Shown piece by piece: positions 10,826 to 59,249 of a DNA stretch of 64,000 nt. The stretch comes from Octopus sinensis (Eukaryota). The DNA lies in assembly GCF_006345805.1 (NCBI RefSeq), contig NC_043010.1:7936001-8000000 (forward strand), read 5' to 3'. Each line of letters begins with the position of its first letter. Within the stretch, counting starts at the first letter, position 1. The position numbers were made by a program, and so were the translations under genes. A model generated the notes under the pieces. The model did not search any database and was not told the DNA's origin. It saw only the letters and a list, made by a program, of their open reading frames with translations.

Positions 10826-12587
10826 TGTAGTTGCTTTGTTAAGTGGTTCATTAGCCAATTCGTGCATGCTGTTTCAAGATGCATTAGATTTATTGAACTA
10901 AGGTTTGTTTAATTGTACAGAAATTATGAAACCATCCTCAAGGCTGGAAAAGGTTAAAGCTTCCATGTATGTTTTCTTTTATATACGTTTATTGACTTCT
11001 GTCGTTGGACATTTGCCATACTGGAGCATCACTTCAAATACTTTATGCAAATTTTTTAATGCTGAAGTAATTAAATTTTCATCATTTGTTTAGCATTTTT
11101 CAGTTTTAAGACAAAATATCAGAGTTTATAATCATTCACACAGATTTTTTATTTTTTATTTTTGGCTTTTATGTGTTTATAGAAAATGCTACTAACCTGT
11201 GGTTTATTTGGTATTACATATTCCTTCCTCCTTCCCTCAAGTGTGTATATAAGTATGTGCATACGTATATGTATGTGCATTTATGTGACTTTACTGTATT
11301 GTGTTTGTATTTGTGATTGCATATGTATCTGCATGTGTGTGTGTTTGTGTGAGTAATTTTGCACATGTGGTTTTAAGAGTGGCATTTTAGCAGTGTTTGG
11401 AGCACAGAGATATGCATGCAGTTTGGTGCACTCCTTGAAAAGGTGGTGCTGTAGGAGAAGATTAATTTGGTATGTTGGAGGGAAACACAGATTACTTAAG
11501 TAGAAGTCCAACTAGCTAGTTTGGAAGAACTAATTGTTTTACAGGACAGAAATGGAAGTTTAGGACAAGTCAGAGGTTTAGGACAAGTCAGAAGTTTAGA
11601 CAATGGTAGAGATGTGACAGACAGTAATGATCAGTCAAATGATATGAATTTTTTCTTGATTTTTGTTTTCCGTTTTTTTTTAATCTAGAATCGGTGATGT
11701 TGGTGTCAGGAAGATGCACTTTTCTAAAGAAACTGTTCATAGTAAAATTGTTTATTTAAAAAAAATGTTATTTTAAAAATTAATGTAATCCTTCTTGAAT
11801 GAATGTTAACCACACTGAGAAGTTTCTTGGGGATGGTTAGTCCAGCATTTAAAGCATGGTAGTGTCCTCTATCTGGGAAGTGATCCTAAGATAATGAAGT
11901 CTGCAGCAGACATTTTTTTTCTTTTGAGTTTGCATTTTCAAGTTGTTAACTACACTTTGATAGACAGGTGGGATCTATCTAGTAGGGATGATATGAAAAA
12001 GATAAAGAGCATTGAATGTTAGTTTTCACAGAAACCAAAAAAATGAAATTGGATGAAACAGAAACCAAATTATTTATACAAAGAAGAGAAATAATGAGAG
12101 AAAAAAAAAAGAGATAGGAGAGCTATGATGGATGTTAGGGTTGATAGATGGTAATCAAAAATGCATCATCAACACAGGGGCTGAAATGAAGTGTTCTGCG
12201 AAAAATCTCTTTATCTAAATGATATATGAACAGTATTATATATAAAATGATACACGGGGAACACAAAATTATTGAGAATAAATCTAAATGTGATTCATAG
12301 GTAATAATATATATCAAATGTTACATGGTTAGTAATATATATATATATATATTATAAGATACATGAACACCATAAAAATATAGACAGACTATCTAAAAAT
12401 TTTGAAAGCATCTAAAGGGACTTCAAACCATTTTGTTTTTGTCAGAGAATATAAAGCTACAGTAGAATATCTGTGACAACCATACTATTGGGCAATGAAG
12501 AATGGAACATATTCTTACTCATTTTGAGATATTGGTCTATGATGACTTTTATAATGTTTGAAGGAAATACATATAAGTGCATATATA

Positions 12588-14864: not shown

Positions 14865-15130
14865 ATTTGTCCATCCTTCTCTGCCAACTATTCCTGAGAG
14901 CATTGTAGAGGTAGAATCCTTAGGTACTTCTTCCATAGGGCCCTATCAGAAGTAACCATCCCTATATTTTTCAACTGATTTCCCAAGCATAACCAACTGA
15001 GACTATGGATATTACTCACCCATCACATTCTTAGAATGCCCCTCGGTATTTTGCTGGTTGGCTTGGCTTGAAAAATCCATCTGGCAGCATTCTAATCATA
15101 TGTCCATTGAACTATCAGTGAATAGAAACA
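14865..15130 (-). mobile_element. RTE (Expander/Rex3-like) LINE 3' relic
   Basis: Minus-strand translation GHMIRM...SWLCLG...SDRALWKKYLRILP...EKDGQMDG ending in (GATG)n, like Expander/Rex3 3' ends; contains stops. Confidence 0.6.
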
Positions 15131-33319: not shown

Positions 33320-33482
33320 CTGTAAATTGACCCATATCATCCATGTTCCCTTCACATATTCCTTGTCCACTGTCCACATATGATTCTGGTCTCATGTCAC
33401 TGTATCGGTAAAGTGCCTGTGCTGAAGCTGCTTGCTCTTCGGTCCAGCCAACATATGTCTGAACTTCCTGCTGAGAACACTT
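33320..33482 (-). CDS. PCDH: Protocadherin second coding exon (cytoplasmic tail), 163 nt, phase 0 to phase 1
   Basis: Acceptor ttttgtttctttttttcttttcttctcccccccccttaattatAG| and donor CAG|GTACGT. Open in the frame set by the upstream donor: KCSQQEVQTYVGWTEEQAASAQALYRYSDMRPESYVDSGQGICEGNMDDMGQFT(G). Contains DSGxG as in protocadherin tails. Confidence 0.82.
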
Positions 33483-44882: not shown

Positions 44883-47207
44883 CTGATGAGTTCCTTTAGT
44901 AAATGGCTGTGAATGAATTTCCATAGTTGAGTCTCTTCCTTTCTGACTAAGCTCATGTTTGGATGATGGTTGTGTTGCACAAAAGTATTCTGACTGTCTG
45001 CTGCAATTCATTAGTTGTTTTGGAGGAACCGCTCCGCATTGATACGGAGTGTTCCTTTGGTTTTTTCTCCTGACAATGCATATGGTAATGGAAACAACCA
45101 GTAATACGGAAACTGTCACTGCTGCCACTATGATTATGATGAATAAATTGATGTGTATTTTATCGTCAGACTGAAACTGCACTGCTGTCAGTTTAGTTGA
45201 TGTTTTGTTACTGACAGTCAGAGTTAAGGATAATGTAGTAGTAGCTGATAAAACAGGAATACCACTGTCTTTCACTTTAAGTAGAAGATCATATGATCCA
45301 GCATCATTTTGGTAAACAATCCGTGAAAAAGACAGCACACCTGTGTATGGATTGACAGAAAATAAATTTCTACCATTCCCTCCAAATATTTCAAACTTAA
45401 TAAAAGAATTTTGCCGGCTATCCCTATCAGAGGCTCTCAGAACTGTTATGTCATTTTTGCTTTGTGGTTGATAGAAGACATCAAGGCTAAAAGGGTCGAA
45501 GCTGGGAAATGTAAAATACGGTGCATTGTCATTTTCATCCATAACTTCGATAACTATATTTGCTGTGCTACTCAGAGATGGAGTTCCATTATCTTTGGCC
45601 AAAACTTTGAATTTATAAACTTCTTGCTGTTCACGATCTAATGATTGAGTAGTTGAAATAAATCCAAAATCAGATATTTTAAAAGGTAATGCAAATTTAA
45701 TGTTAGAAAAAAGAAAATATGTAAGCTGACTACCTGATCCAAGATCAGAGTCAGTAACGTTGATAAAACCAACAGGAAAATTAGGCATTTCGTTTTCATA
45801 TGTTAAAAATTTGAATGTTTCTTTTGTGAATTGTGGTTTTACATCATTGACATCAGTTACTTTGAGTGAAAACTCATGTTCAGTTTTCAGAGAAGGAGTT
45901 CCTCTGTCACTGCAAGTTATTGTGAAATTTATTCTACTTTCACTTTCTCGATCAACAGTCTGCTTTACTGATACTTTGTATCTTTTCTGACCAAGACTCT
46001 GAAGAGTGAACTTATTATGCCGGAGGTCACATGTCACTTGTCCATTCAAACCAATATCATTGTCGACAACTTTCACATATGCAATGAAGCTGCCAACTTC
46101 CATCGCTTCAGATATTGTTGCTGTGTTTCCAGTTAATTCTGAGAAATTTACTTCAATCACTGGAGCACTGTTTTGTTTATTGATAATATTTACCACAACT
46201 GTTACAACAGAGCTCAGAGGAGGACTGCCATCATCTCTGGCTTCAATAAATAGTTTATAAGTTTGTTTCTTTTCTGGTTTAAATTTTTTCAGAAGAAAGA
46301 TTTCTCCAGTATTTTTATTTATTTCAAAAAACGATTTTGCTCTCTCAGATGTCATGGAACTAAAATAGTATGATACGTTTCCATTTTTACCTGAATCTAA
46401 ATCAGTAGCTGACAAGATAAGAACTGGTATCTCTTTTGCTTGTCTGTTATTCACTGTAATATTGTAAATGTCTTGAGAAAATATTGGTGGATTGTCATTT
46501 TCATCTGTAACTGATATTTGAACATCCAAAATACCATGTTTTGATGGAGTCCCTCCATCTTTACCAATTACCTGCAACTCATATGTGTCTCTAACTTCTC
46601 TGTCTAACTCCCTTTTTAAAATTATTCCAAGTGAATAAGAGCCATCAACTCTCTTGGAAACTGCTAATGTGAATGGATCATCCTCATTTTTTATTAATTC
46701 ATAGGTGATCTGTGAATTTATGATGCTAACATCTTTGTCGACAGCATGTGGAATTGATTTTTTTGTTCCTTGCCTATCTGTTTCAGCAAAATGAAGACTG
46801 ACTACTTTTTCAGGAAACTCTGGTTGATGGTCATTAATATCTTCAATTCTTACTTTGATTTCAAGTACCTTGAGGAATGATTTTCCTGTACGCACTGCAA
46901 TATCCACCATTTTGAAACATTTAACATTATATTTACAGAGAGTCTCAGCATCTAATATCTTGGCAGTATACAGTTCTCCTCTTTTAGAAACATTAAACAA
47001 CTGGGAACTGCTTCCTGTTCCTTTTTCTAGTTGGCTGAATTTGATTATACTGTGCTCTTTCGATGAGATGTTATCCATTAGATGTGTATCAATAGCAACA
47101 TTACCTAGCAATGTACCAGGACTTTCACCTTCCCTGATGTGGTAGGTAAAATCCTCACAGATACAGGTGTGTAGATAAATCAATATGACACATATGTGTG
47201 TCAACAT
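44883..47207 (-). CDS. PCDH: Protocadherin large exon: signal peptide, EC1-EC6, TM, juxtamembrane tail (775 codons to the splice donor)
   Basis: Cadherin motifs DINDHQP, LDRE, DENDNPP, DVNDVKP, DENDNAP; EC1 Cys pair LCKYNVKC; TM IIIIVAAVTVSVLLVVSITICIV. Donor CAG|GTAATT after Q775; the last 8 aa of the 783-aa ORF are intronic read-through. Confidence 0.96.
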
Positions 47208-47257
47208 GTCACCAGGATTGAGTGTAAGACCGATTCAGTGAAAAAGATCAATAAAGC
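47208..47257 (-). other. 5' UTR part of the large exon, behind a strong splice acceptor
   Basis: ttttttctttttgtttccattgcAG| at 47258/47257; an in-frame TGA upstream of the ATG supports 47207 as the start codon. Confidence 0.8.
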
Positions 47258-48647
47258 CTGCAATGGAAACAAAAAGAAAAAAAGCCATTTTCACAAAGAC
47301 ATAATATAAACTGATTTCACTGCATGACTTAACAAAAATGTTCTTTAACATTAAATAAATCAAAACAAAACACTTTAAAAAAAACAAAGTCTCCCTATAA
47401 AACCGAAATAATTCTCGCAATTTCAAATTTCACAAGAATTTGATCTATAAAATATGAATAGGAAATATTCCTAGTGAACAGTAGCAGCAAGATATATATT
47501 TCAAACTGCAATAAAATAAAACAGTCAATGATGTGAAATGGAAGATTTAGAGGAAATGCGAGAAAGCAGCAGATATTCATATTTCTCTTTGTAATAGAGT
47601 AAAAATCCCAAGATTACTTATTCTTATCCCTTGGTTTTAATTTATTTCTTTCGAAACAACAATGATACAAGCAATGTATCAGAAGCACACGGGAGAAACT
47701 CACTCAATATCATAGCGATGATACCGAGCAACAACTGTTAACTGAATATAACAAAAAAAAAGAAAGAAAGAAAAAAGAAAAAGAAAAGAAAAAGAAAAAA
47801 GAAAAATCACAATAGCTCAAACATGTAAATCTGCAGTGATTATTACTGGATCAAGTTCAGGCATTTTTGCTTCTTCACTAATAACCAGGTGGGAAGGAGG
47901 GCAAAAGCTATTCACGATATATTTTCTGCTCTGACATGCAATGTTTTCTTTAATATTGTTTTACCTTCTTCAGCAGGCTACCAGCCAGCTAGCCAACCAG
48001 CCAACCAGAGTGGTTATGCTTGATATTATGTATTTCCAAACATGAGACATGTATATTGATTACTATCATACTGCATTTAGAAAAGAATTTATTCTGGTCA
48101 CATTTAAAGATTTTGGGAAACTGCACTTCCAACACTTCATTCTCACAGCATCTGAAAGTTTTATCATTCTTTAACCATAGAGAGTTTTTCATGGAATATT
48201 ATTTGTTTTGTTACGTTTGTTTTTTTTTTGTTTTTTTTTTTCTTTTTGTAAGGTTAAAACTAACACCTTAAAATGTGAGAGTGATTGGCAAGTAGAATTT
48301 GTTGCTAGAATGCTTGAGTGACTAAGAGAATAAAAACCCATTTTAATACTGAGAGAAATGGTTTGCAAAAGTTAATATAGGTGATCTCCAGAATTTTATA
48401 TAAAATACAACTATGCTATGAGAATACATCAATAATTTGAACAACTAACAAACAAATATCCACAGAATTAATGTTTTTATTTTATTTTCATGGTAATGGG
48501 AGAAAGACTTAAGATAATGGTTTGGTTCACAAAATTTTATAAATAAAATTTATTGCACACAATAGTGAATAAGCACGAAATATAATGGTATTTTGTAAAT
48601 AAACTAAAATAGCTAAAGTACTAAGTTAGTACAAATGAGCATGTGAA

Positions 48648-48698
<51 letters not shown>

Positions 48699-48727
48699 AT
48701 ATCTATCTGTCTGTCTGTCTGTCTGCC

Positions 48728-48758
<31 letters not shown>

Positions 48759-48759
<1 letters not shown>

Positions 48760-49140
48760 ATTCATGATCATCGTTTAACGTCCGTTTTCCGCGCTAGCAC
48801 GGGTTGGACGGTTCGACCAGGGTCTGGGAAGCCAGGGGCTGCACCAGGCTCCAGTCTGATCTGGCAGTGTTTCTAGAGCTGGATGCCCTTCCTAATGCCA
48901 ACCACTCCATGAGTGTAGTGGGTGCTTTTTACGTGCCACCTGCACAGGTGCCAGGGGAGTCTGGCATCGGCTACGATCGGTTGGTGTTTTTAACGTACCA
49001 CCAGCACGGAAGCCAGCCAAAGTGGTGCTGCCGTCGGCCACGTTCAGGTGGTGCTTTTCATGTGCCACTGGCACAGAAGCCAGTCGAGGCGGCGCTGGCA
49101 TCGGCCACGTTCAGATGGTGCTTTTTATGTGCTACCGGCA
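48759..49140 (-). mobile_element. Long family C copy with internal repeats
   Basis: Reverse complement of 3848-4047 plus four diverged ggtgcttttacgtgccac units. Confidence 0.82.
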
Positions 49141-49875
49141 GCTTAAATCATCAACCCATACCAACATGGAAAATGGAGGTTAAAAGATGACGATGATGAA
49201 GACACAAACAAATATTAAAAGTAGAAATGATATGTAAAATAGGCTGTCCAACATGGTGCTAGCTTAATATTTGACTGCTATAGAAGTAGCTGATCTTTGT
49301 TATTGATTTGGGAATGAAACTGTGTGTGTTTTCTCTTAGGAGCAGTTGACAAACCATGAAGCAGCTCAGCAGGAGACTCCTTTGCCTCTTTTATCTGCAC
49401 ATTTATTGCATCAAAAACATGCATTTATGTACTTATTTAACCCACAGTGAGAATTTAGAATTTTGATTATGTGCATGCATATGTATACATCTCTGACTAC
49501 ATCACCAACACTGAAGTTCCCAAGTGAGCAAAGGTCACCAGCCTGGAAGCCATTTTATTTGAGACATGACTACGTTGGATATATATATATATAGTTATAT
49601 ACAACAAAATATTAAGGAAAGACCCTGACAGGTCATTCGACTCACTTGAAAAGAGCAGCCAAACTCAAACCGCAAAAATAGTAGTAATTCTGAAAACTAG
49701 AGAAGAAATAAAAACATTTATCCCCTTCAATTTTGTACCCTGCAAGGTTTCAACATCTTTCACGCAATCGAATTTAATTAAATTAAATTAAATCCGTTTA
49801 TGCTTGGCTTGTCTATATATATATATTGATATGTATGTAAATATGTTTGTATATATGTGTGTTTATGCTTGTGAG

Positions 49876-50276
49876 GTGAAAGACCACTGCCTACCCAAGA
49901 CCATTATGTACGGTGAGCTCACCACTGGCCACTTAACAGGGGGCACTAAAGAAGCATCACAAGGATTGTCTGAAGCAGTCCTTTAGTGTTGTGACATTGA
50001 TTATTGAGAGGGATCCAATCTAAGTGCTGACCATGCTGCTTGGTGGCATACCATCAGTGATGCTGATTCCTTCTTTGAGATGACTTGCAGTGTCTCTCTT
50101 GAAGACAAACATTAGAGGCAAAAAAATAATACAGTTGCATCATAAAACCCTGGGCACTCATACCTCTGTCATCATTGCAGTTGGATATGTCAATCTTACA
50201 TCAGCTTTATCAGCCACAAACGAGTGTGCAGACATGGACAACAGCCTTCCGAATCTTCATCAGGGAAACCAAGCCA

Positions 50277-50280
<4 letters not shown>
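49876..50280 (+). mobile_element. RTE-BovB-like LINE 3' relic
   Basis: DHCLPKTIMYGELTTGH...CHHCSWICQSYISFISHKRVC (C-terminal zinc-finger-like) and 3' end gaaaccaagccaa; frameshifted. Confidence 0.75.
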
Positions 50281-50313
<33 letters not shown>

Positions 50314-50702
50314 AGATACATACATACACACGCACACACACACACTATGTATATATACATACACAGACACACACATAATGTGTATATGTATGTATCTATC
50401 GTACATATCACGCAATATTGTATGAGTGTATACACGCACATATATATATATATAATTTATATGTGTATATATATATATTATTTATATATGTGTATATATA
50501 TATATATATATATAGATATAATATATATATATATTTTTAAATTTCTTTTACTTTTTATCTAGTTTCAGCTCACAAGCTGTGGCCATGCTGTGGCACCGCC
50601 ATATATATAGTTATATATATATATTGATATGTATGTAAATATATTTGCATATATGTATGTTTATGGTTATGTGGTGTGCATGTATTTATATATATATATA
50701 TT

Positions 50703-50756
<54 letters not shown>

Positions 50757-52012
50757 TGTATATTTTGTTATATATATCTATGTGTGTGAGTGTGTATGTA
50801 TTCATGCATATAGATGATGATGATGATGATGATTAAGATGTGATGAGGAGGAGGAGGAGGATGCATTCTTTGTTGGTTTCAGTGATGAGCATTCGTTTCT
50901 TCAATCAACTGAACTACAGCCTCATTAAATAAATGTTTAAGCTGACATAATTCACAGGCTTTAATCACAATGACACATTGTGTGACAAGGTTGGACACTT
51001 CAATTACAAGTACAAACCATTCAATAGGCGACCTGACATCTTGCACTTACTCAGTTTCACTTAAAAGGCATGGCTCAGACTGGATGTATACGGCTAAATG
51101 ACATGTGCACAAGATATTGTGCTGTCAGATGAAACCCAAGACCTCACGATGGAGAACCAAATGTTCATCTACACAGTAAGTTATACAAACATCCATGTGC
51201 GCACACATGGACACACACACATGCACACAAACACACACATAAAACAGGAAAGAGAGAGAGAGAGAGATAACTATGTCTCTCTCATATATATATGTGTGCC
51301 TTTTAGTATTTATATATGTGTGTGTATTTATGTAATATACATACACACACACATATGTTATATATATATACATGTGTGTGTGTGTGTGTGTGTAATTGAG
51401 TATACCTTATTGATATAATTATTAATAAAATACAATATTTTGTGTCAGTTTTTCAATGGGTTTCATACTAGGGTTGAGATAATCCTAGCAATCATCAGAA
51501 AAGACTTCCTTGTGATTACCAAGATCATCCTAAATGCTGTATGAAACTGATTGATATGAGAATACATTATCGTATTTTATCAGTAATAATATACTCACTC
51601 TTGAAATGAATATATGAGTGGCTATATTTTTCATGCCCCATGGATTTTTAAACAACTACATATATACAGAAGTCATCCTATTGCACTTAAATATAGCTGA
51701 CTTTGCAACATAGGGACAAGACCTGAAGAAGGGAATCACAACTGGCTGCAAAATTTCCATAATTCTCTAGCTCACACGTGTGAACCTTCTTATAACAGCT
51801 ACTGATTAAGGAGCCCAAGCACCAAGAACAGAACTGGGCATTCAACTGCATCCAACAATGGTTTCATAGATAATTTCATAGCGACAACCACAACATGCAT
51901 GGAAGCAGGATGAGTGGGGACTTTACTTGAACACATGAAAACATGGGCTAGAGTGACGATTAAGCCTAAGCAATACAGGAATATAGGATCAGGAAAAGTA
52001 AATTAACTAATA

Positions 52013-52175
52013 GGCGCAGGAGTGGCTGTGTGGTAAGTAACTTGCTAACCAGCCACATGGTTCCGGGTTCATTCCACTGCAGGCATCTTGGCCAAGTGTC
52101 TTCTGCTATAGCCCCGGGCCAACCAAAGCCTTGTGAGTTGATTTGGTAGACAGAAACTGAAAAGAGCCTGTCGTA

Positions 52176-52232
<57 letters not shown>

Positions 52233-52439
52233 TGTTGTGTGTGTGTTTGTCCCCCTAGCATTGCTTGACAACCGATGCTGGTGTGTGTTTATGTCCCGTC
52301 ACTTAGCGGTTCGGCAAAAAGACCGATAGAATAAGTACTGGGCTTAAAGATAAGTGCCGGGATCGATTTGCTCGACTAAAGGCAGTGCTCCAGCATGGCC
52401 GCAGTCAATGACTGAAACGAGTAAAAGAGTAAAGAGAGT
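52013..52439 (+). mobile_element. Family A SINE
   Basis: Head-to-tail match. Confidence 0.9.
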
Positions 52440-52557
52440 AACAGAAGAAGATGCAGATAAATACAAGGACAACCTATTCCCTTAATAGTAAGTGGAAAAG
52501 CCAATCACACTCATTGACATGTAGTAGTCAACTACATGAGACACAATCATGGGTATC

Positions 52558-52990
52558 CTCTTTTACTCTTTTACTTGTTTCAGTCATTTGACTGCGGCCA
52601 TGCTGGAGCACCGCCTTTATCGAGCAACTCGACCCCGGGACTTATTCTTTTTGTAAGCCCAGTACTTATGCTATCAGTCTCTTTTGCCGAACCGCTAAGT
52701 AACGGGGACATAAACACACCAGCATCGGTTGTCAAGCAATGCTAGGGGGGATCAAAACCCAGACACACAAACACACACACGCACATATATATATAGATAT
52801 ATATATATATATATATATACATATATACGGACGGGCTTCTTTCAGTTTCCGTCTACCAAATCCACACACAAGGCTTTGGTCGGCGCGAGGCTATAGCAGA
52901 AGACACTTGCCCAAGATGCCACGCAGTGGGACTGAACCCGGAACCATGTGGTTGGTAACAAGCTACTTATCACATAGCCACTTCTGTGCC
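52558..52990 (-). mobile_element. Family A SINE
   Basis: Reverse-complement head-to-tail match. Confidence 0.9.
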
Positions 52991-53584
52991 TATGAAAGCA
53001 GATCTGGAGGGAAGACTGCAATTTCCTCAGGTTGTCCAGATAAACCTGTGACCAAATTTAGAATTTCAGTTTGAGGGAAAAAAAAAAGAAAAGAATCTTG
53101 TCTGAGCTTGGTGTCCAATGGAAATAAGAATATAATCAAATTTTTTAATGGAACCATGCAAATTCAAGAACCTTCCTCTGAAATACAGGGAGAAAAGATG
53201 GAAAGCATGGCTATACTTTTACAAGTTTGGCTGTAGAAAATTCCCTGTCAGTCAATATGAAGAATGCTTGCAACCATTGGAATAAGAAGAAGTGAGAAAA
53301 TAGCAGCTGTGTGGAAGGATGAGAGAGGCAGCAGAAAGTGTGCATTGCTAGTTATAGAGCAAGAGGGAAGAGTTAAGCTGGGAGTCAGGAGAATGATCAG
53401 CAATGATTTGACCAAAATTTCCAAGAGTCAAAATCCATAATGATCATTGGATATCTTATGATGACTTTAATTTTTCTGGCCAAAGCTACATTCACCAAAG
53501 ATGAATGGAGGCAAGAATCTTTTAGATGTACTCAGTACCATCTGACCCATGAAAGCATGGAAAAGTAGATGTTAAAACAATGAT

Positions 53585-53927
53585 ATCTTTATTTTTTATC
53601 TTTTACGTTTTATTTGTTTGAGTCTTTGATCCTTGAAGGATGTAGTTGAACAAATTGGCCCCAGTACTTCATTTTTAAGCCTGGAACTTTTCTATGGGTC
53701 TCTTTTGCCGAACTGCAAAGTAATGGGAACATGAACATACCAACACTGGTTGTCAAGCTGACAAATGCAAACACAAAGACACATACACATAGATATATTT
53801 ATATACATATTGGTTAACCCCCAGAGCTATAAAGGCATACACCTTCCCAAGTTGTCATGCCATGGGACTGAACCTGGAAATTTGTTGTTGGGAAGCAAGT
53901 TTCTTACCACAAACCACATCTGTGCTT
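53585..53927 (-). mobile_element. Older family A SINE
   Basis: Diverged reverse-complement match. Confidence 0.65.
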
Positions 53928-53954
53928 ATGATAAGGATTTATAAAGATATATAA

Positions 53955-53986
<32 letters not shown>

Positions 53987-54275
53987 ATTTAAATATTTCT
54001 ATACATACACAAACACACATATATATGTATACATACATACAAGACTTGCAAAATGGAATAGGAAAAATCTGGGTTACATGTTTCATAGCAAGTGGAACCT
54101 CAGAAATGGTAAAATCCCAAACGAGGTGTATACCACCAGCTACTCTTCAGATGAAGGATATCTTGATTAGATTAAAGGCTACATTGTCACAATGAGGTAC
54201 ATGTTGATGCAAAGAGGATTCAGTTAGAATGTGTGTGTCCATTTGTATACACAACACACACACACATTTGCATGT

Positions 54276-54603
54276 GCACAAACACACATGCAGAGGCAAG
54301 GCTAAGTAGATGAGAAGTTCACTTCACAACAAATAGTTTTAGGTCTAGATTTCACATTGGAAAAGTGTCTCCTATAAAATCTGAGGCTGATCAGGTCCTT
54401 GTGAGTGGATTTAAAACTGATACTGAAAACCTCTCATATATGCACACACACACACACACACACGTGTGCATGCGCACAAACACACATGCAGAGGCAAGGC
54501 TAAGTAGATGAGAAGTTCACTTCACAACAAATAGTTTTAGGTCTAGACTTCACATTGGAAAAGTGTCTCCTATAAAACCTGAGGCTGATCAAGTCCTTGT
54601 GAG
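54276..54603. repeat. Tandem duplication: 130-bp shared segment, 198-bp period
   Basis: 54276-54405 vs 54474-54603, three substitutions; bounded by (CA)n. Confidence 0.93.
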
Positions 54604-54948
54604 GTGACACACACACACACACACACATGCACACACATGCATATATGTATATGCATGTATTTGTGTATGAGAACATTGGTATATTTGCTTATATAAGTGC
54701 TTCTCCAAAATAATGGAGGTACAAGGAATGAGGGTGATGTCAATTGTCATGTTATTATATGTTGGCCTCGTGCTTTCAAAGTTGTGAAAACTTAAAGATA
54801 CCTCCCATGCGTTTTACATTTCAGCATTCTGAATTTAGCCATTTCAAATTGCTTTTTATAACTTCAATTAAAGAAAGCAAAGTTTATCATCCACGAAGGC
54901 AATAAGAAGACTGTACATGTATGATCACGTCTGCATTCACACACAACC

Positions 54949-55060
<112 letters not shown>

Positions 55061-55089
55061 TATATATATGTGCTAGTATAATATATAGT

Positions 55090-55290
55090 GCTGTGTTCTC
55101 TGGAGTGCAGCTCTCACAAGAAGAATTGTTCAGAGAAACTAAAGAGAAGAGGACTGTATGACAAGCAACAGTCCAGCTGGGTCCTAATTCTTCTATTGCA
55201 TGTCCACACTGTGACCATGAGTTTTATGCCAATATTGGCCTAATAAATCACCTCAGGGCTCACAAAGTGTAAGGCTTCTGAGACATGAAA
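55090..55290 (+). mobile_element. RTE-type LINE 3' relic
   Basis: SIACPHCDHEFYANIGLINHLRAHKV* resembles the RTE C-terminal C2H2-like motif. Confidence 0.6.
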
Positions 55291-55343
55291 GGTAAAATAT
55301 ATGTGTGTGTGTGTATGTATATATATAAATAAATATATATAAA

Positions 55344-55384
<41 letters not shown>

Positions 55385-55774
55385 CAATACACTCACACCA
55401 CCTCACATATATACTCACATGTTTATATATGGTGTATATATATGTATATATATGTATATGTATGATATGTTATATACACATATATACCATGCTATATAAT
55501 ATATCATATAAATTTATACATATATGTATATTTCCTTCTATAGGTTTCATAAAGATTTTTTTAGTTTCAAATAAAGATTTTACAAATCTATTTCTATCTC
55601 TCCTCCCCTCTTTGTTGTGTGTGTGTGTGTGTGCGTGTATGTGTGTGTATATACACACATGCACACACACACACACACATATATATATTATATATATGTA
55701 TACATACATATATTGATGTATGCATAAATGCATGTGTATACCTACACACACACACATATATATATGTATATACG

Positions 55775-55805
<31 letters not shown>

Positions 55806-57116
55806 TCTCATGTGTATGTATGAATGTATTAATATATACATACACATATTCATACATATATGTTTGCATATATTTATACATATACATATATATTTGTATG
55901 TATGTATGTATGTATGTATGTATGTATGTATGTATGTATGTATGCATGCATGCATGCATCTTTTTATCTATGTATTCACTCACACACTGCATGTACATAA
56001 TTACATAAATATCCATGCCATATTCTATGTATTAACAGCTATTGGATGTCAGGAAAATGAGTGTTAGTAGAGGGAAATGTGATAAAGATATATAACTGAA
56101 CATACACATACATACGCAAGAACATATACATATATAAATATACACACTCACACTCACACACACATGTAACTGTAGCATTCACATAAAACAGCTTTGTATG
56201 TGAATGCTAGAGAAAGCTAAAAATATAATATTACAAAACTGTAAAAAAAAAAGTTTTTAGAAAATTACAAAAAAAAAATCAATCACATTATTTTATCAAC
56301 TAAAGAATACTTGAGTAGTTCTAAAAGGTTTCAAAAACATTTGTTAGAGAAAAAGCTCTCTAATAATAACTGGAAGCATGAGAAATTCTACAATATAAAC
56401 AATGAATTATTATGAATAAGGAAATTGGAAAAAAATATCCAATTTGTTTTGTAAAAGCAGAGAAATTTTTTTTCTACTTCTGTTTGTCAATTTTGAAAAC
56501 AATAAACAGGATTCAGATTGTGAGTTGCTTCTATTATTTTACTGAGAAATAGAAGAAGAAAAGTGATAGAGAGAGAAAAATGTATTATTAAGGAATTTAA
56601 GAAACTTTTTTATATTAATTTTGGCTTTTGAGTTATGGAAATTATTAGCGTAATATTTTGGAAACATCCAAAGTTTGAGATTTTTAAAAAAGTGGTAAAA
56701 GAATTAGATAAATATAATAAATAATGTATTAAATCCATTTGATTTTGTTTTTGTTCTTAATATAACAGCTTATAATAATAATTCTAGAGGCTATATACAT
56801 ATTGGCAGAGATACAAATAACATTTGTCCCAATTTGTGTTATAAACTATTTAGAAATAGGAGGTAGATTTTATATGAATAATTGATATCTTATATTCAAA
56901 TGAGATTTAAAATGATATCTAAATATATACTAGAAAGGGTGATTAGAAAACTTAGAAACTTAAATCTATTATCAAAAAAACTATAAGAAAAGAAAAAGGA
57001 AAACATTTGGTTTATCAACTTAGTGTTTGTGTGTGGAAATTACATTTTGTTGTAAAGAGAAAAGTAATGTATACGGATTACTACTTAGAAACAGAATAAT
57101 AATAATAATAATAATA

Positions 57117-57172
<56 letters not shown>

Positions 57173-57813
57173 TTAATAATAATAATAAATAAATAAAAGG
57201 TATATCAACAACTGTCACAGTCAGACAGAATTACTTTTTAACTAAGAATCATATAGATATATATGTTCATATGTTGCGTGTGCGTGTGTGTATATGTGTG
57301 TATGTATGTTTATATTTTCATGTAATAAAATGTTCATAATAATATCATTAAAAAACCCATAGTATACTCTGAACTTTTGACAAGTAGATAAGCTTATGTT
57401 TATATGTACCAATGAATGTTAGTGTTTAAAGTTAATGTTAAAAAATATCATGAACAAAAATACTCCTTGTTAATTAGTTAAATATGAAAGTAGCAATCCC
57501 ACTTGAAGATTTTGAATATGCTAATAACAAAAAAAAACAAACACATATATGCAAATATCCCTATTTTGTTTAACTTTAACACCGCTATATGTAAGTATAC
57601 AAAACTTGATAAAAATTCATATTCTAAACTTGTGCATAGCTAAGTATATTTTGTTTACTATTTTTTAACTTTGTTTTTACTCTGTCAGTTATACTAACAC
57701 TGCTTTATAGTATTTAATAGTTTGAACGCTTGTGACATTTGTAACTATATAACATAACATACAGATACTTCACTATATGAAGAATATACAAATAACAATA
57801 TATAGCTACTTAC

Positions 57814-58010
57814 TTGCACAAGTGAATCTTTGCCAGTGTGCCATTACATGCGATGTGTATTCTGCTGTAGAGTTGTACAGTTACTGCTGCTGTTATATGC
57901 TAGCAGTGTTATGTGGCTTGGCCTATGTTATGGTAATGTAAAGTCTGCACTTCTACTAGTCATAGTAGTGTATATGCAATGTTTGATTGTCTGTTGCAAC
58001 CAATGAATGG
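57814..58010 (-). other. Candidate non-coding 5' exon of the protocadherin (far boundary uncertain)
   Basis: Donor CAA|GTAAGT at 57814/57813; unique, GC-richer sequence; stops in all three frames; lies in a SINE-free island. Confidence 0.35.
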
Positions 58011-58384: not shown

Positions 58385-59249
58385 CTAAAATAGCAACAGA
58401 AACTCTCACAACTTATCTTCTACAGAGAAATGCTTTCCATCTTCAACATACAATAAATTACACAATTTTCCATGCCTATATTAAAATCATCTTTCCCTTG
58501 TGAAAAATTCAAGAACTGGGAATAAAATTGCGAATTAAAATATAAGTTTATAGTGAATATTATGAGCTGTATTCCTAGTAATGAAGTTATCAGCCAATCT
58601 TCATTCAGTGGAGTTGGAAATAAATAACTGAATTTTGTTTTTGTTTTTTTCAGTTTTATTTTTGATTATTATTTTCAACTAAAGAATGGCCTTAGGAGAA
58701 ATTTTATTTCAAGATTGTTGCCAAAATTTATTATATATTATGATAAAGCCTACAGAGTTATCCAAGAAAATTCAATAATTTCAAGAAAATTTTGTGTAAC
58801 AATTGGCCTCTCTATGGAATAACAAGTAGGTTACTTATAAAACATTTGGTTTCTGAAGCTATATTTGGTATTTAAGAAAATGAAAGTAGAAAACAAAAAC
58901 AAAAAAATCAGCATCTTTCATGAGATAAAAGAAGGAGTGTGACAAATTTGTGAATGTTGTTCTAAGGCAATATATGAAACATTCATTAATTTAACTATAT
59001 TACACATTCAACATTCCAATGACAACAAGAATATTTAAAATGGATATTTTAAAATTATTCTGCCTTTCAGTGTCTGAAAATGATATTCCTGTGACCTTTG
59101 TGGAGGAAATAGTTTATATCTGTTACACAATATTTTAACAGTACTAATCTTACATCTGTTCTGTTTTAGATAATATAAACACACACACAAGTACACACAC
59201 ACACACACATATGTATGTACATATATGTGTGTATGGTATATTATATATG

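What the first reader, a model, noticed from the sequence alone, without database searches (positions are those of the whole stretch)
44883..47257. The ectodomain exon is an internal cassette, not a first exon
It has a strong acceptor 50 nt before the ATG and a phase-0 donor at its end. Vertebrate clustered Pcdh variable exons are first exons with their own promoters. A self-contained internal cassette could instead be chosen by alternative splicing from a shared non-coding leader, a different route to neuronal barcode diversity (hypothesis).
Basis: partly seen in the sequence, partly recalled or inferred. Interest (0 to 1): 0.7.

Follow-up and report, generated by a model that had tools for sequence, protein, structure and literature searches.

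The report
Octopus protocadherin exon with private leader
The big exon is the second exon of an already annotated Octopus sinensis protocadherin gene; it does have a real splice acceptor in front of its start codon, but it most likely gets its own short non-coding first exon 10.6 kb upstream, not a leader shared with its neighbours.

Summary
On the minus strand, ttgcag|G opens the exon at 47257, the ATG is at 47207, and CAG|GTAATT closes it after 44883 in phase 0. The 775 codons are 100% identical to Octopus sinensis RefSeq 'protocadherin beta-15' isoforms X2 and X5-X8.

The acceptor is unlikely to be chance. It is the only pyrimidine-rich CAG|G on this strand in 64 kb. It sits at the same -50 position in Argonauta hians. 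The matching acceptors of two neighbouring ectodomain exons are used in annotated isoforms.

- **Tails are private.** Each neighbouring gene has its own paralogous tail exons.
- **A private leader is likely.** A 53-nt block (57866-57814) has a TATAA 31 nt upstream and a consensus GTAAGT donor. It is conserved in synteny in Argonauta, and a paralogous copy lies upstream of another ectodomain exon.
- **No shared leader was found.**

The acceptors do allow splicing across genes. Upstream-gene isoforms end inside the 5' UTR of the next ectodomain exon. This would explain why RefSeq lumps 3-5 such units into one "gene".

I had no transcript data for this exon itself. The architecture is ordinary, and interest is low to moderate.

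The parts
58452..58885 (-). Conserved non-coding block A, about 590 nt upstream of the candidate leader. Possibly a promoter-distal regulatory element.
   Evidence: 78% identity over 446 nt to the syntenic A. hians interval L004 55225-55664. The match is unique.
57893..57897 (-). TATAA, 31 nt upstream of where strong conservation of the leader begins. Putative TATA box (inferred).
   Evidence: ATAAC followed by a CAG-rich run is also seen before the A. hians leaders.
57814..57866 (-). Candidate non-coding exon 1 (private leader), at least 53 nt. It is followed by the donor CAA|GTAAGT (GT at 57813-57812).
   Evidence: 45/53 identical to A. hians with no indel, and similarity stops right after GTAAGTA. 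A paralogous element with the donor aligned lies 12 kb upstream of A. hians ectodomain exon 3.
47258..57813 (-). Proposed intron 1 (10,556 nt). It holds conserved blocks at 47293-47450, 47819-47973 and 48041-48128.
47258..47283 (-). Polypyrimidine tract and acceptor (tttttttctttttgtttccattgcag).
   Evidence: Conserved in A. hians.
44883..47257 (-). Exon 2: 50-nt 5' UTR (47257-47208) followed by 775 codons (47207-44883). These encode the signal peptide, six cadherin repeats, the transmembrane helix and the juxtamembrane cytoplasmic stretch. The donor is phase 0.
   Evidence: Pfam Cadherin (five stretches) plus Cadherin_2. 775/775 identical to O. sinensis XP_029644506-8 and XP_036364489/93.
33320..33482 (-). 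Exon 3 (KCSQQEVQ...MGQFT), private to this gene. The donor is phase 1.
   Evidence: 100% tblastn match. Splice sites read. Conserved in A. hians L003 18638-18812.
15092..15111 (-). Coding part of an alternative terminal exon, (V)QWTYD* (isoform X7).
11946..11978 (-). Coding part of an alternative terminal exon with two acceptors 4 nt apart. They give DRSHLSIKV* (X5) or DPTCLSKCS* (X6).
   Evidence: Conserved in A. hians L003 27995-28112.

Best explanation
The window is Octopus sinensis DNA. The exon at 47257-44883 (minus strand) is exon 2 of a multi-exon protocadherin gene that lies in a head-to-tail array of paralogs.

Proposed gene model:
- Transcription starts at a gene-specific promoter about 10.6 kb upstream.
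- It produces a short non-coding exon 1, at least 53 nt, ending at 57814.
- Exon 1 is spliced to the acceptor at 47257.
- The large exon supplies the ATG, signal peptide, six cadherin repeats, the transmembrane helix and the first cytoplasmic residues.
- Its phase-0 donor joins private downstream exons (33482-33320, then alternative terminal exons). These give several C-termini.

Which ectodomain a cell makes is therefore set gene by gene through promoter use, as for ordinary tandem duplicates. It is not set by picking a cassette from a common leader.

Because each ectodomain exon keeps a strong acceptor, transcripts that run on from the upstream neighbour can splice into it. This creates upstream-gene isoforms whose reading frame stops in the next exon's 5' UTR.

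Shown here: the splice signals, donor use, private tails, conservation, and acceptor use at two neighbouring ectodomain exons.
Inferred: the junction 57814^47257 and the transcription start.
For: Identity and donor use:
- The exon is 775/775 identical to the O. sinensis isoforms, and all of them continue into the exon at 33482.

Acceptor:
- It is the only such CAG|G site on this strand in the 64-kb window.
- It sits at the same -50 position in A. hians.
- It lies at the corresponding position to the exon 0b acceptor, AG|AGTTTATTAACC against AG|GCTTTATTGATC.

Acceptors of neighbouring exons are used:
- The 0a isoforms P0155 and P0005 end SLLTFQH*. This equals the first 24 nt of the 0b exon.
- The exon 2 isoforms P0002, P0137 and P0003 end IADF(L/V)N..MRPSL* or NFLNHHMRPSL*. 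These are encoded right after the exon 3 acceptor, 44 nt before its ATG.
- The small gaps between the database's gene ranges for neighbouring genes, read here as coding-sequence ranges, agree with this.

Private tails:
- Five ectodomain exons each have paralogous but different tail exons.

Private leader:
- The block 57866-57814 plus GTAAGT is conserved in synteny.
- A paralogous leader with an aligned donor lies upstream of A. hians exon 3. A profile search recovers only the three leaders it was built from above noise.
- A 17-codon upstream ORF keeps its frame and stop position across the proposed junction in both species.

Literature:
- Cephalopod protocadherin diversity is attributed to full gene duplications, not to shared final exons (PMC9068888).
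Against: - No transcript, CAGE or RACE data for this exon could be reached, so the junction 57814^47257 is inferred.
- RefSeq places this exon in one gene with exons 0a and 0b (O. sinensis X1-X9), and with five ectodomain exons in O. bimaculoides (X1-X19). I could not see which exon or splice site links them.
- No leader-like element was found within 10 kb upstream of A. hians exons 0b and 2 or of the P0175 paralog.
- Conserved blocks 40-870 nt upstream of the acceptor could be an alternative proximal promoter.
- The similarity of the leader to the 5' UTR of RNA-derived contig L001 from another cephalopod is weak (E = 0.25). Contig L002 gave no profile hit and aligns only loosely.
Confidence: 0.6

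Rival explanations
1. One shared non-coding leader, possibly far upstream, is spliced alternatively to one of several self-contained ectodomain exons. The choice of ectodomain would then be made by splicing.
For: - Every ectodomain exon examined in this sub-array has an acceptor in front of its ATG.
- RefSeq groups 3 (O. sinensis) or 5 (O. bimaculoides) ectodomain exons with no shared coding exon into one gene.
- Exon 0a is entered about 63 nt before its ATG from different upstream exons in different models (P0163, P0005, P0154).
Against: - A conserved exon-like leader with its own TATAA and donor lies between the upstream gene and this exon. A paralogous one lies in front of exon 3.
- Tails are private.
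- Units are 100-190 kb apart.
- At least two of the links in the lumped RefSeq genes (0a to 0b, 2 to 3) are explained by chains in which an upstream gene's tail exon is spliced to the next ectodomain exon. What links this exon to its neighbours was not seen.
- Published analysis found no vertebrate-type sharing of final exons in cephalopod protocadherins.
Confidence: 0.1
2. The exon is normally a first exon, as in vertebrates. The promoter would lie in the conserved 900 nt just upstream. The acceptor would be used only by occasional read-through from the upstream gene.
For: - Conserved blocks lie at 47293-47450, 47819-47973 and 48041-48128.
- There is no transcript evidence for the leader junction.
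- The distant paralog in L006 shows no clear acceptor near its ATG.
Against: - These blocks are not shared with paralogous upstream regions, so there is no common promoter motif.
- The acceptor is kept exactly in place over the Octopus-Argonauta divergence.
- The conserved GTAAGT donor at 57813 needs a partner.
Confidence: 0.15
3. The acceptor serves mainly the upstream gene (0b). It would give that gene an extra C-terminus that stops in this exon's 5' UTR, as seen for 0a into 0b and for 2 into 3. There would be no dedicated leader.
For: The same arrangement is annotated at two neighbouring junctions in three species.
Against: - None of the nine O. sinensis isoforms ends with any of the three peptides this junction would give (ALLIFFTESVLHSILVTC*..LY*..FIDLFH*).
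- It leaves the canonical mRNA of this gene without a start site.
Confidence: 0.1

Closest known systems
Cephalopod tandem-array protocadherin genes (Albertin et al. 2015; Albertin et al. 2022, PMC9068888)
   Same: A multi-exon gene in a same-strand array of close paralogs. Diversity arises by whole-gene duplication with gene conversion. The exact protein is already in RefSeq for O. sinensis.
   Different: Nothing essential. The 5' non-coding exon and the splicing from one gene into the next ectodomain exon are not discussed in the papers I could read.
Vertebrate clustered Pcdh-alpha/gamma loci (variable first exons plus three shared constant exons; PMC7811963)
   Same: One large exon encodes the signal peptide, six EC repeats, the TM helix and a short variable cytoplasmic part, and ends in a donor. 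The exons lie in tandem arrays.
   Different: Here the exon has an upstream acceptor and most likely a separate non-coding exon 1. The downstream exons are private to each gene, not shared. No promoter motif common to the paralogs was found just upstream.
Vertebrate non-clustered delta-protocadherin genes such as PCDH7, PCDH10 and PCDH19 (from my own knowledge, not tested here)
   Same: A large ectodomain and TM exon followed by a few small private cytoplasmic exons, with alternative C-termini.
   Different: Those genes are dispersed rather than arrayed, so read-through into a paralogous neighbour does not arise.
Drosophila Dscam1 mutually exclusive cassette exons
   Different: Dscam cassettes encode interchangeable parts of one protein between shared constant exons. 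Here each exon carries its own ATG and a whole ectodomain, tails are private and the leader appears private.
Conjoined or read-through transcripts between tandem genes
   Same: Annotated isoforms join tail exons of one gene to the first coding exon of the next (0a into 0b, 2 into 3).
   Different: Here the junctions are conserved in position between Octopus and Argonauta annotations. They give short alternative C-termini. Their function is unknown.

Membership tests
Protocadherin (cadherin superfamily) | Signal peptide, about six extracellular cadherin repeats and a single TM helix | tested here: met
   Pfam Cadherin E = 1e-76 in five stretches, plus the N-terminal Cadherin_2 domain. A hydrophobic helix INLFIIIIVAAVTVSVLLVVSITICIV is present. 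Absence of a classical cadherin cytoplasmic (catenin-binding) domain was not checked, because the tail exons were not scanned.
Cephalopod tandem-array protocadherin genes | Same-strand array of paralogs, each a complete multi-exon gene with its own tail exons | tested here: met
   The order of genes on the strand is 0a, 0b, 1, 2, 3. Tails are paralogous but distinct. Tail exons of this gene were located in the window.
Vertebrate-type clustered Pcdh (variable/constant) | Variable exons spliced to one shared set of constant exons | tested here: not met
   The five neighbouring ectodomain exons all have different exon-3 and last-exon sequences. This agrees with PMC9068888.
Vertebrate-type clustered Pcdh (variable/constant) | The variable exon is a first exon with its promoter immediately upstream | tested here: inconclusive
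   A conserved acceptor at -50, use of the corresponding acceptors at exons 0b and 3, and a conserved upstream leader with a donor all argue against this feature. No 5' end data exist for this exon.
Dscam-type mutually exclusive cassette array | Cassettes lie between shared upstream and downstream exons of one transcription unit | tested here: not met
   Downstream exons are private. The upstream leader candidate is gene-specific and has a paralogous copy at exon 3. The upstream part rests on inference.
Dscam-type mutually exclusive cassette array | Cassettes encode interchangeable segments of one reading frame | tested here: not met
   Each exon has its own ATG and signal peptide. An in-frame stop lies 30 nt upstream of the ATG.

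The most novel reading that the evidence does not exclude
Every ectodomain exon in this sub-array keeps a working acceptor. Long transcripts started at one upstream promoter or leader might therefore skip to, and choose among, several downstream ectodomain exons across 100 kb or more. Part of octopus protocadherin choice would then be made by splicing. RefSeq's lumping of 3-5 ectodomain exons into one gene would be the footprint of such transcripts, rather than of mere read-through chimeras.
Probability: 0.1. Interest if true: 0.7.

Novelty: already known. Interest (0 to 1): 0.3.

Why it matters
Octopus and vertebrate protocadherin expansions are a textbook case of convergence, so how each system picks an isoform matters. 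This locus suggests that octopus uses complete duplicated genes, each probably with its own promoter, leader and tails.

Unlike vertebrate variable exons, the octopus ectodomain exons carry acceptors. Read-through from a neighbour is therefore spliced in rather than skipped.

This has a practical consequence. Automated annotation merges several protocadherin units into one gene, which can distort gene counts and the assignment of single-cell expression. One recent survey lists 55 cadherin-like genes for O. bimaculoides against the 168 protocadherin genes originally reported, a different category. I did not check whether merging causes this gap.

Tried and rejected
- **Octopus DNA for the neighbouring genes.** Five look-ups returned no DNA because the gene ranges exceed 100 kb. 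I used the compact A. hians orthologous loci instead.
- **Search with the N-terminal 219 aa for RNA-derived fragments of this gene.** It gave one unrelated hit.
- **Look-up of the 783-aa read-through ORF.** It is not on record.
- **Tail exons of the upstream genes in the 16.7 kb upstream of the exon.** None were found. A weak 'NAFNFSK' match at 3641-3591 is probably chance.
- **The block at 47973-47819, which contains AAG|GTAAAA, as an alternative leader.** Rejected, because the conservation lies mostly downstream of the putative donor.
- **A promoter motif shared by paralogs just upstream of the ectodomain exons.** Only repeats were shared.
- **Rfam and tRNA scans of the window.** Nothing was found.
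- **RNA contigs L001 and L002 from another cephalopod.** Their 5' UTRs resemble the octopod leader only weakly, so I treat them as suggestive only.
- **Albertin et al. 2015.** It could not be read in the held library.

Full report
**What is there**

The only long ORF in the 64-kb window runs from 47207 to 44856 on the minus strand. On that strand a 25-nt pyrimidine tract and CAG precede G at 47257. The ATG follows 50 nt later at 47207. After 775 codons the frame meets CAG|GTAATT at 44883/44882, which is phase 0.

The exon encodes a signal peptide, six cadherin repeats (five Pfam Cadherin stretches plus Cadherin_2), one TM helix and about 70 cytoplasmic residues.

**Whose gene it is**

The 775 residues are identical to five Octopus sinensis RefSeq proteins, 'protocadherin beta-15' isoforms X2 and X5-X8. 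The window is therefore O. sinensis chromosome sequence, and the gene is already annotated.

All five isoforms continue after ...THQ with KCSQQEVQ...MGQFT. That exon lies at 33482-33320, with a good acceptor and a phase-1 donor. Alternative terminal exons lie at 15111-15092 and at 11978/11974-11950/11946, the latter with two acceptors 4 nt apart. The long last exon of isoform X2 is outside the window. Use of the donor at 44883 is thus established by annotation.

**Is the acceptor real?**

- AG sites with at least 17/20 upstream pyrimidines and Y at -3 occur 21 times on this strand in 64 kb. The CAG|G subset has one member, this site.
- In the Argonauta hians ortholog (L003) the exon is 85% identical. 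The acceptor is TTTCTTTCATTTCAG|GG at the same -50, and the UTR is 45/50 identical.
- The acceptors at the corresponding position of neighbouring paralogs are demonstrably used.
  - A. hians exon 0b opens ...ttttcag|AGT TTA TTA ACC TTT CAG CAT TGA, 66 nt before its ATG. That reads SLLTFQH*, which is exactly the C-terminus of Octopus 0a isoforms P0155 and P0005.
  - A. hians exon 3 opens ...tttttttttgtcag|TTGCAG|ATTTT... The sequence IADFVNYPMRPSL* is encoded there, 44 nt before the ATG. It matches the tails of Octopus isoforms P0002 and P0137, the latter through a tandem acceptor 6 nt downstream.
- The database's gene ranges appear to be coding-sequence ranges: for A. hians they start at the annotated ATG and end at about the stop codon. 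On that reading, the gaps between neighbouring genes fit these junctions: 39 nt for 0a to 0b, and 2 nt (Octopus) or 44 nt (Argonauta) for 2 to 3.

Acceptors in front of ectodomain ATGs are therefore functional in this sub-array. For this exon itself, use is inferred from position and conservation.

**Shared tail?**

No. The five consecutive units on the strand are 0a, 0b, 1 (this exon), 2 and 3. Each has its own exon-3 and last-exon sequences. These are recognisably paralogous, for example ...NSFNFSKPLPALP..., but different. This agrees with the published statement that cephalopods use full gene duplication, not shared final exons (PMC9068888). Vertebrates, by contrast, splice variable first exons to shared constant exons (PMC7811963).

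**Shared leader?**

I compared the Argonauta interval between gene 0b and exon 1 with the window upstream of 47257. Only a few conserved islands appear.

One island is window 57866-57814. It is 53 nt long and 45/53 identical, with no indel. It is followed immediately by GTAAGTA, after which similarity stops. A TATAA lies 31 nt upstream, and a CAG-rich run precedes it in both species.

A profile built from the two orthologous copies plus a third element 12 kb upstream of A. hians exon 3 recovers those three sequences and nothing else above noise. In the alignment the donors coincide.

Splicing 57814 to 57257's partner site, 47257, also preserves a 17-codon upstream ORF. Its length and stop position are the same in both species.

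The simplest reading is a private promoter and leader exon for each gene, duplicated together with the gene. Intron 1 here is 10,556 nt.

**Why RefSeq lumps the units**

Isoform numbers, descending lengths and accession runs point to one O. sinensis gene (X1-X9) that contains exons 0a, 0b and 1. They likewise point to one O. bimaculoides gene (X1-X19) that contains five ectodomain exons, with no coding exon in common.

The 0a-to-0b and 2-to-3 junctions described above explain at least part of this. Other gene models also enter exon 0a about 63 nt before its ATG from different upstream exons (P0163, P0005, P0154). An old model fuses 0a to 0b (P0164).

I could not see what links exon 1 to 0b. 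This is the main loose end, and the reason the shared-leader idea keeps a 10% share.

**Limits**

No transcript or 5' end data for this exon could be reached. The exact-protein look-ups failed or returned no DNA for the long Octopus genes. Leaders were not found within 10 kb of three other A. hians paralogs. One more distant paralog shows no clear acceptor. Conserved blocks 40-870 nt upstream of the acceptor could be an alternative proximal promoter.

**Verdict**

The gene looks like an ordinary tandem duplicate with its own non-coding first exon and its own tails.

The proposed route to diversity by alternative splicing is not supported. What is mildly noteworthy is that acceptor-bearing ectodomain exons let neighbouring genes splice into each other, which complicates annotation.

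Noticed in passing
window about 46565-45798 (codons about 215-470 of the exon): A gene-conversion tract. This part (roughly EC3-EC4) is 94-100% identical to the neighbouring paralog (exon 2) within O. sinensis, and likewise within A. hians. Orthologs between the two species are only 84-96% identical there. The N-terminal 200 residues are only 50-72% identical between the paralogs.
   Followed up: partly
window 11980-11946: Two acceptors 4 nt apart (ctag|ATAG|ATCC) put the terminal exon into two frames. This gives the annotated C-termini DRSHLSIKV* and DPTCLSKCS*.
   Followed up: yes
window 47293-47450, 47819-47973, 48041-48128: Non-coding blocks inside the proposed intron 1, conserved 76-87% with A. 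hians in the same order. They are not shared with paralogous upstream regions. Their function is unknown; they could be an enhancer, a splicing control element or an alternative promoter.
   Followed up: partly
window 58885-58452: A 446-nt AT-rich block, 78% identical to the syntenic A. hians sequence. It is the largest non-coding conserved island between gene 0b and this exon, and lies about 590 nt upstream of the candidate leader.
   Followed up: no
window 57844-57814 joined to 47257-47235: If the leader is spliced to the exon, an upstream ORF of 17 codons spans the junction: MAHWQRFTCASFIDLFH* here and MAYRQKFTCSRFIDLLH* in A. hians. Its stop is kept in place by a TGA to TAA change.
   Followed up: partly
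window 27703-27605 and 27397-27209: Sequences matching two extra tail exons of an old O. bimaculoides model (P0132). In O. sinensis the second carries an insertion with an in-frame stop. Neither appears in any of the five O. sinensis isoforms of this exon that I examined.
   Followed up: no
window 5008-4911, 13351-13248, 24288-24192, 31111-31015, 33037-32940, 38040-37953, 52176-52082, 59516-59427, 61572-61475 and others: At least eleven copies of a roughly 100-nt repeat, probably a SINE core. It is also present in the A. hians loci at 72-85% identity. Abundant TA/CA microsatellites fill the introns.
   Followed up: no
L005 101148-101194 (A. hians) and Octopus isoforms P0002 and P0137: The short peptide that the upstream gene gains from the next exon's 5' UTR is conserved (IADFVNYPMRPSL against IADFLNHHMRPSL). 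It is reached through tandem acceptors 6 nt apart. It is unclear whether it is functional or a by-product.
   Followed up: partly
L006 9780-10040 (A. hians paralog P0175): This more distant paralog has a TA microsatellite and no evident polypyrimidine acceptor within 100 nt of its annotated ATG. The acceptor layout may not be universal in the family.
   Followed up: no
literature (PMC13218726, PMC6339937): A 2026 orthogroup survey lists only 55 cadherin-like genes for O. bimaculoides, against the 168 protocadherin genes (a different category) originally reported. Merging of several ectodomain units into single RefSeq genes, as seen here, might contribute. I did not check this.
   Followed up: no
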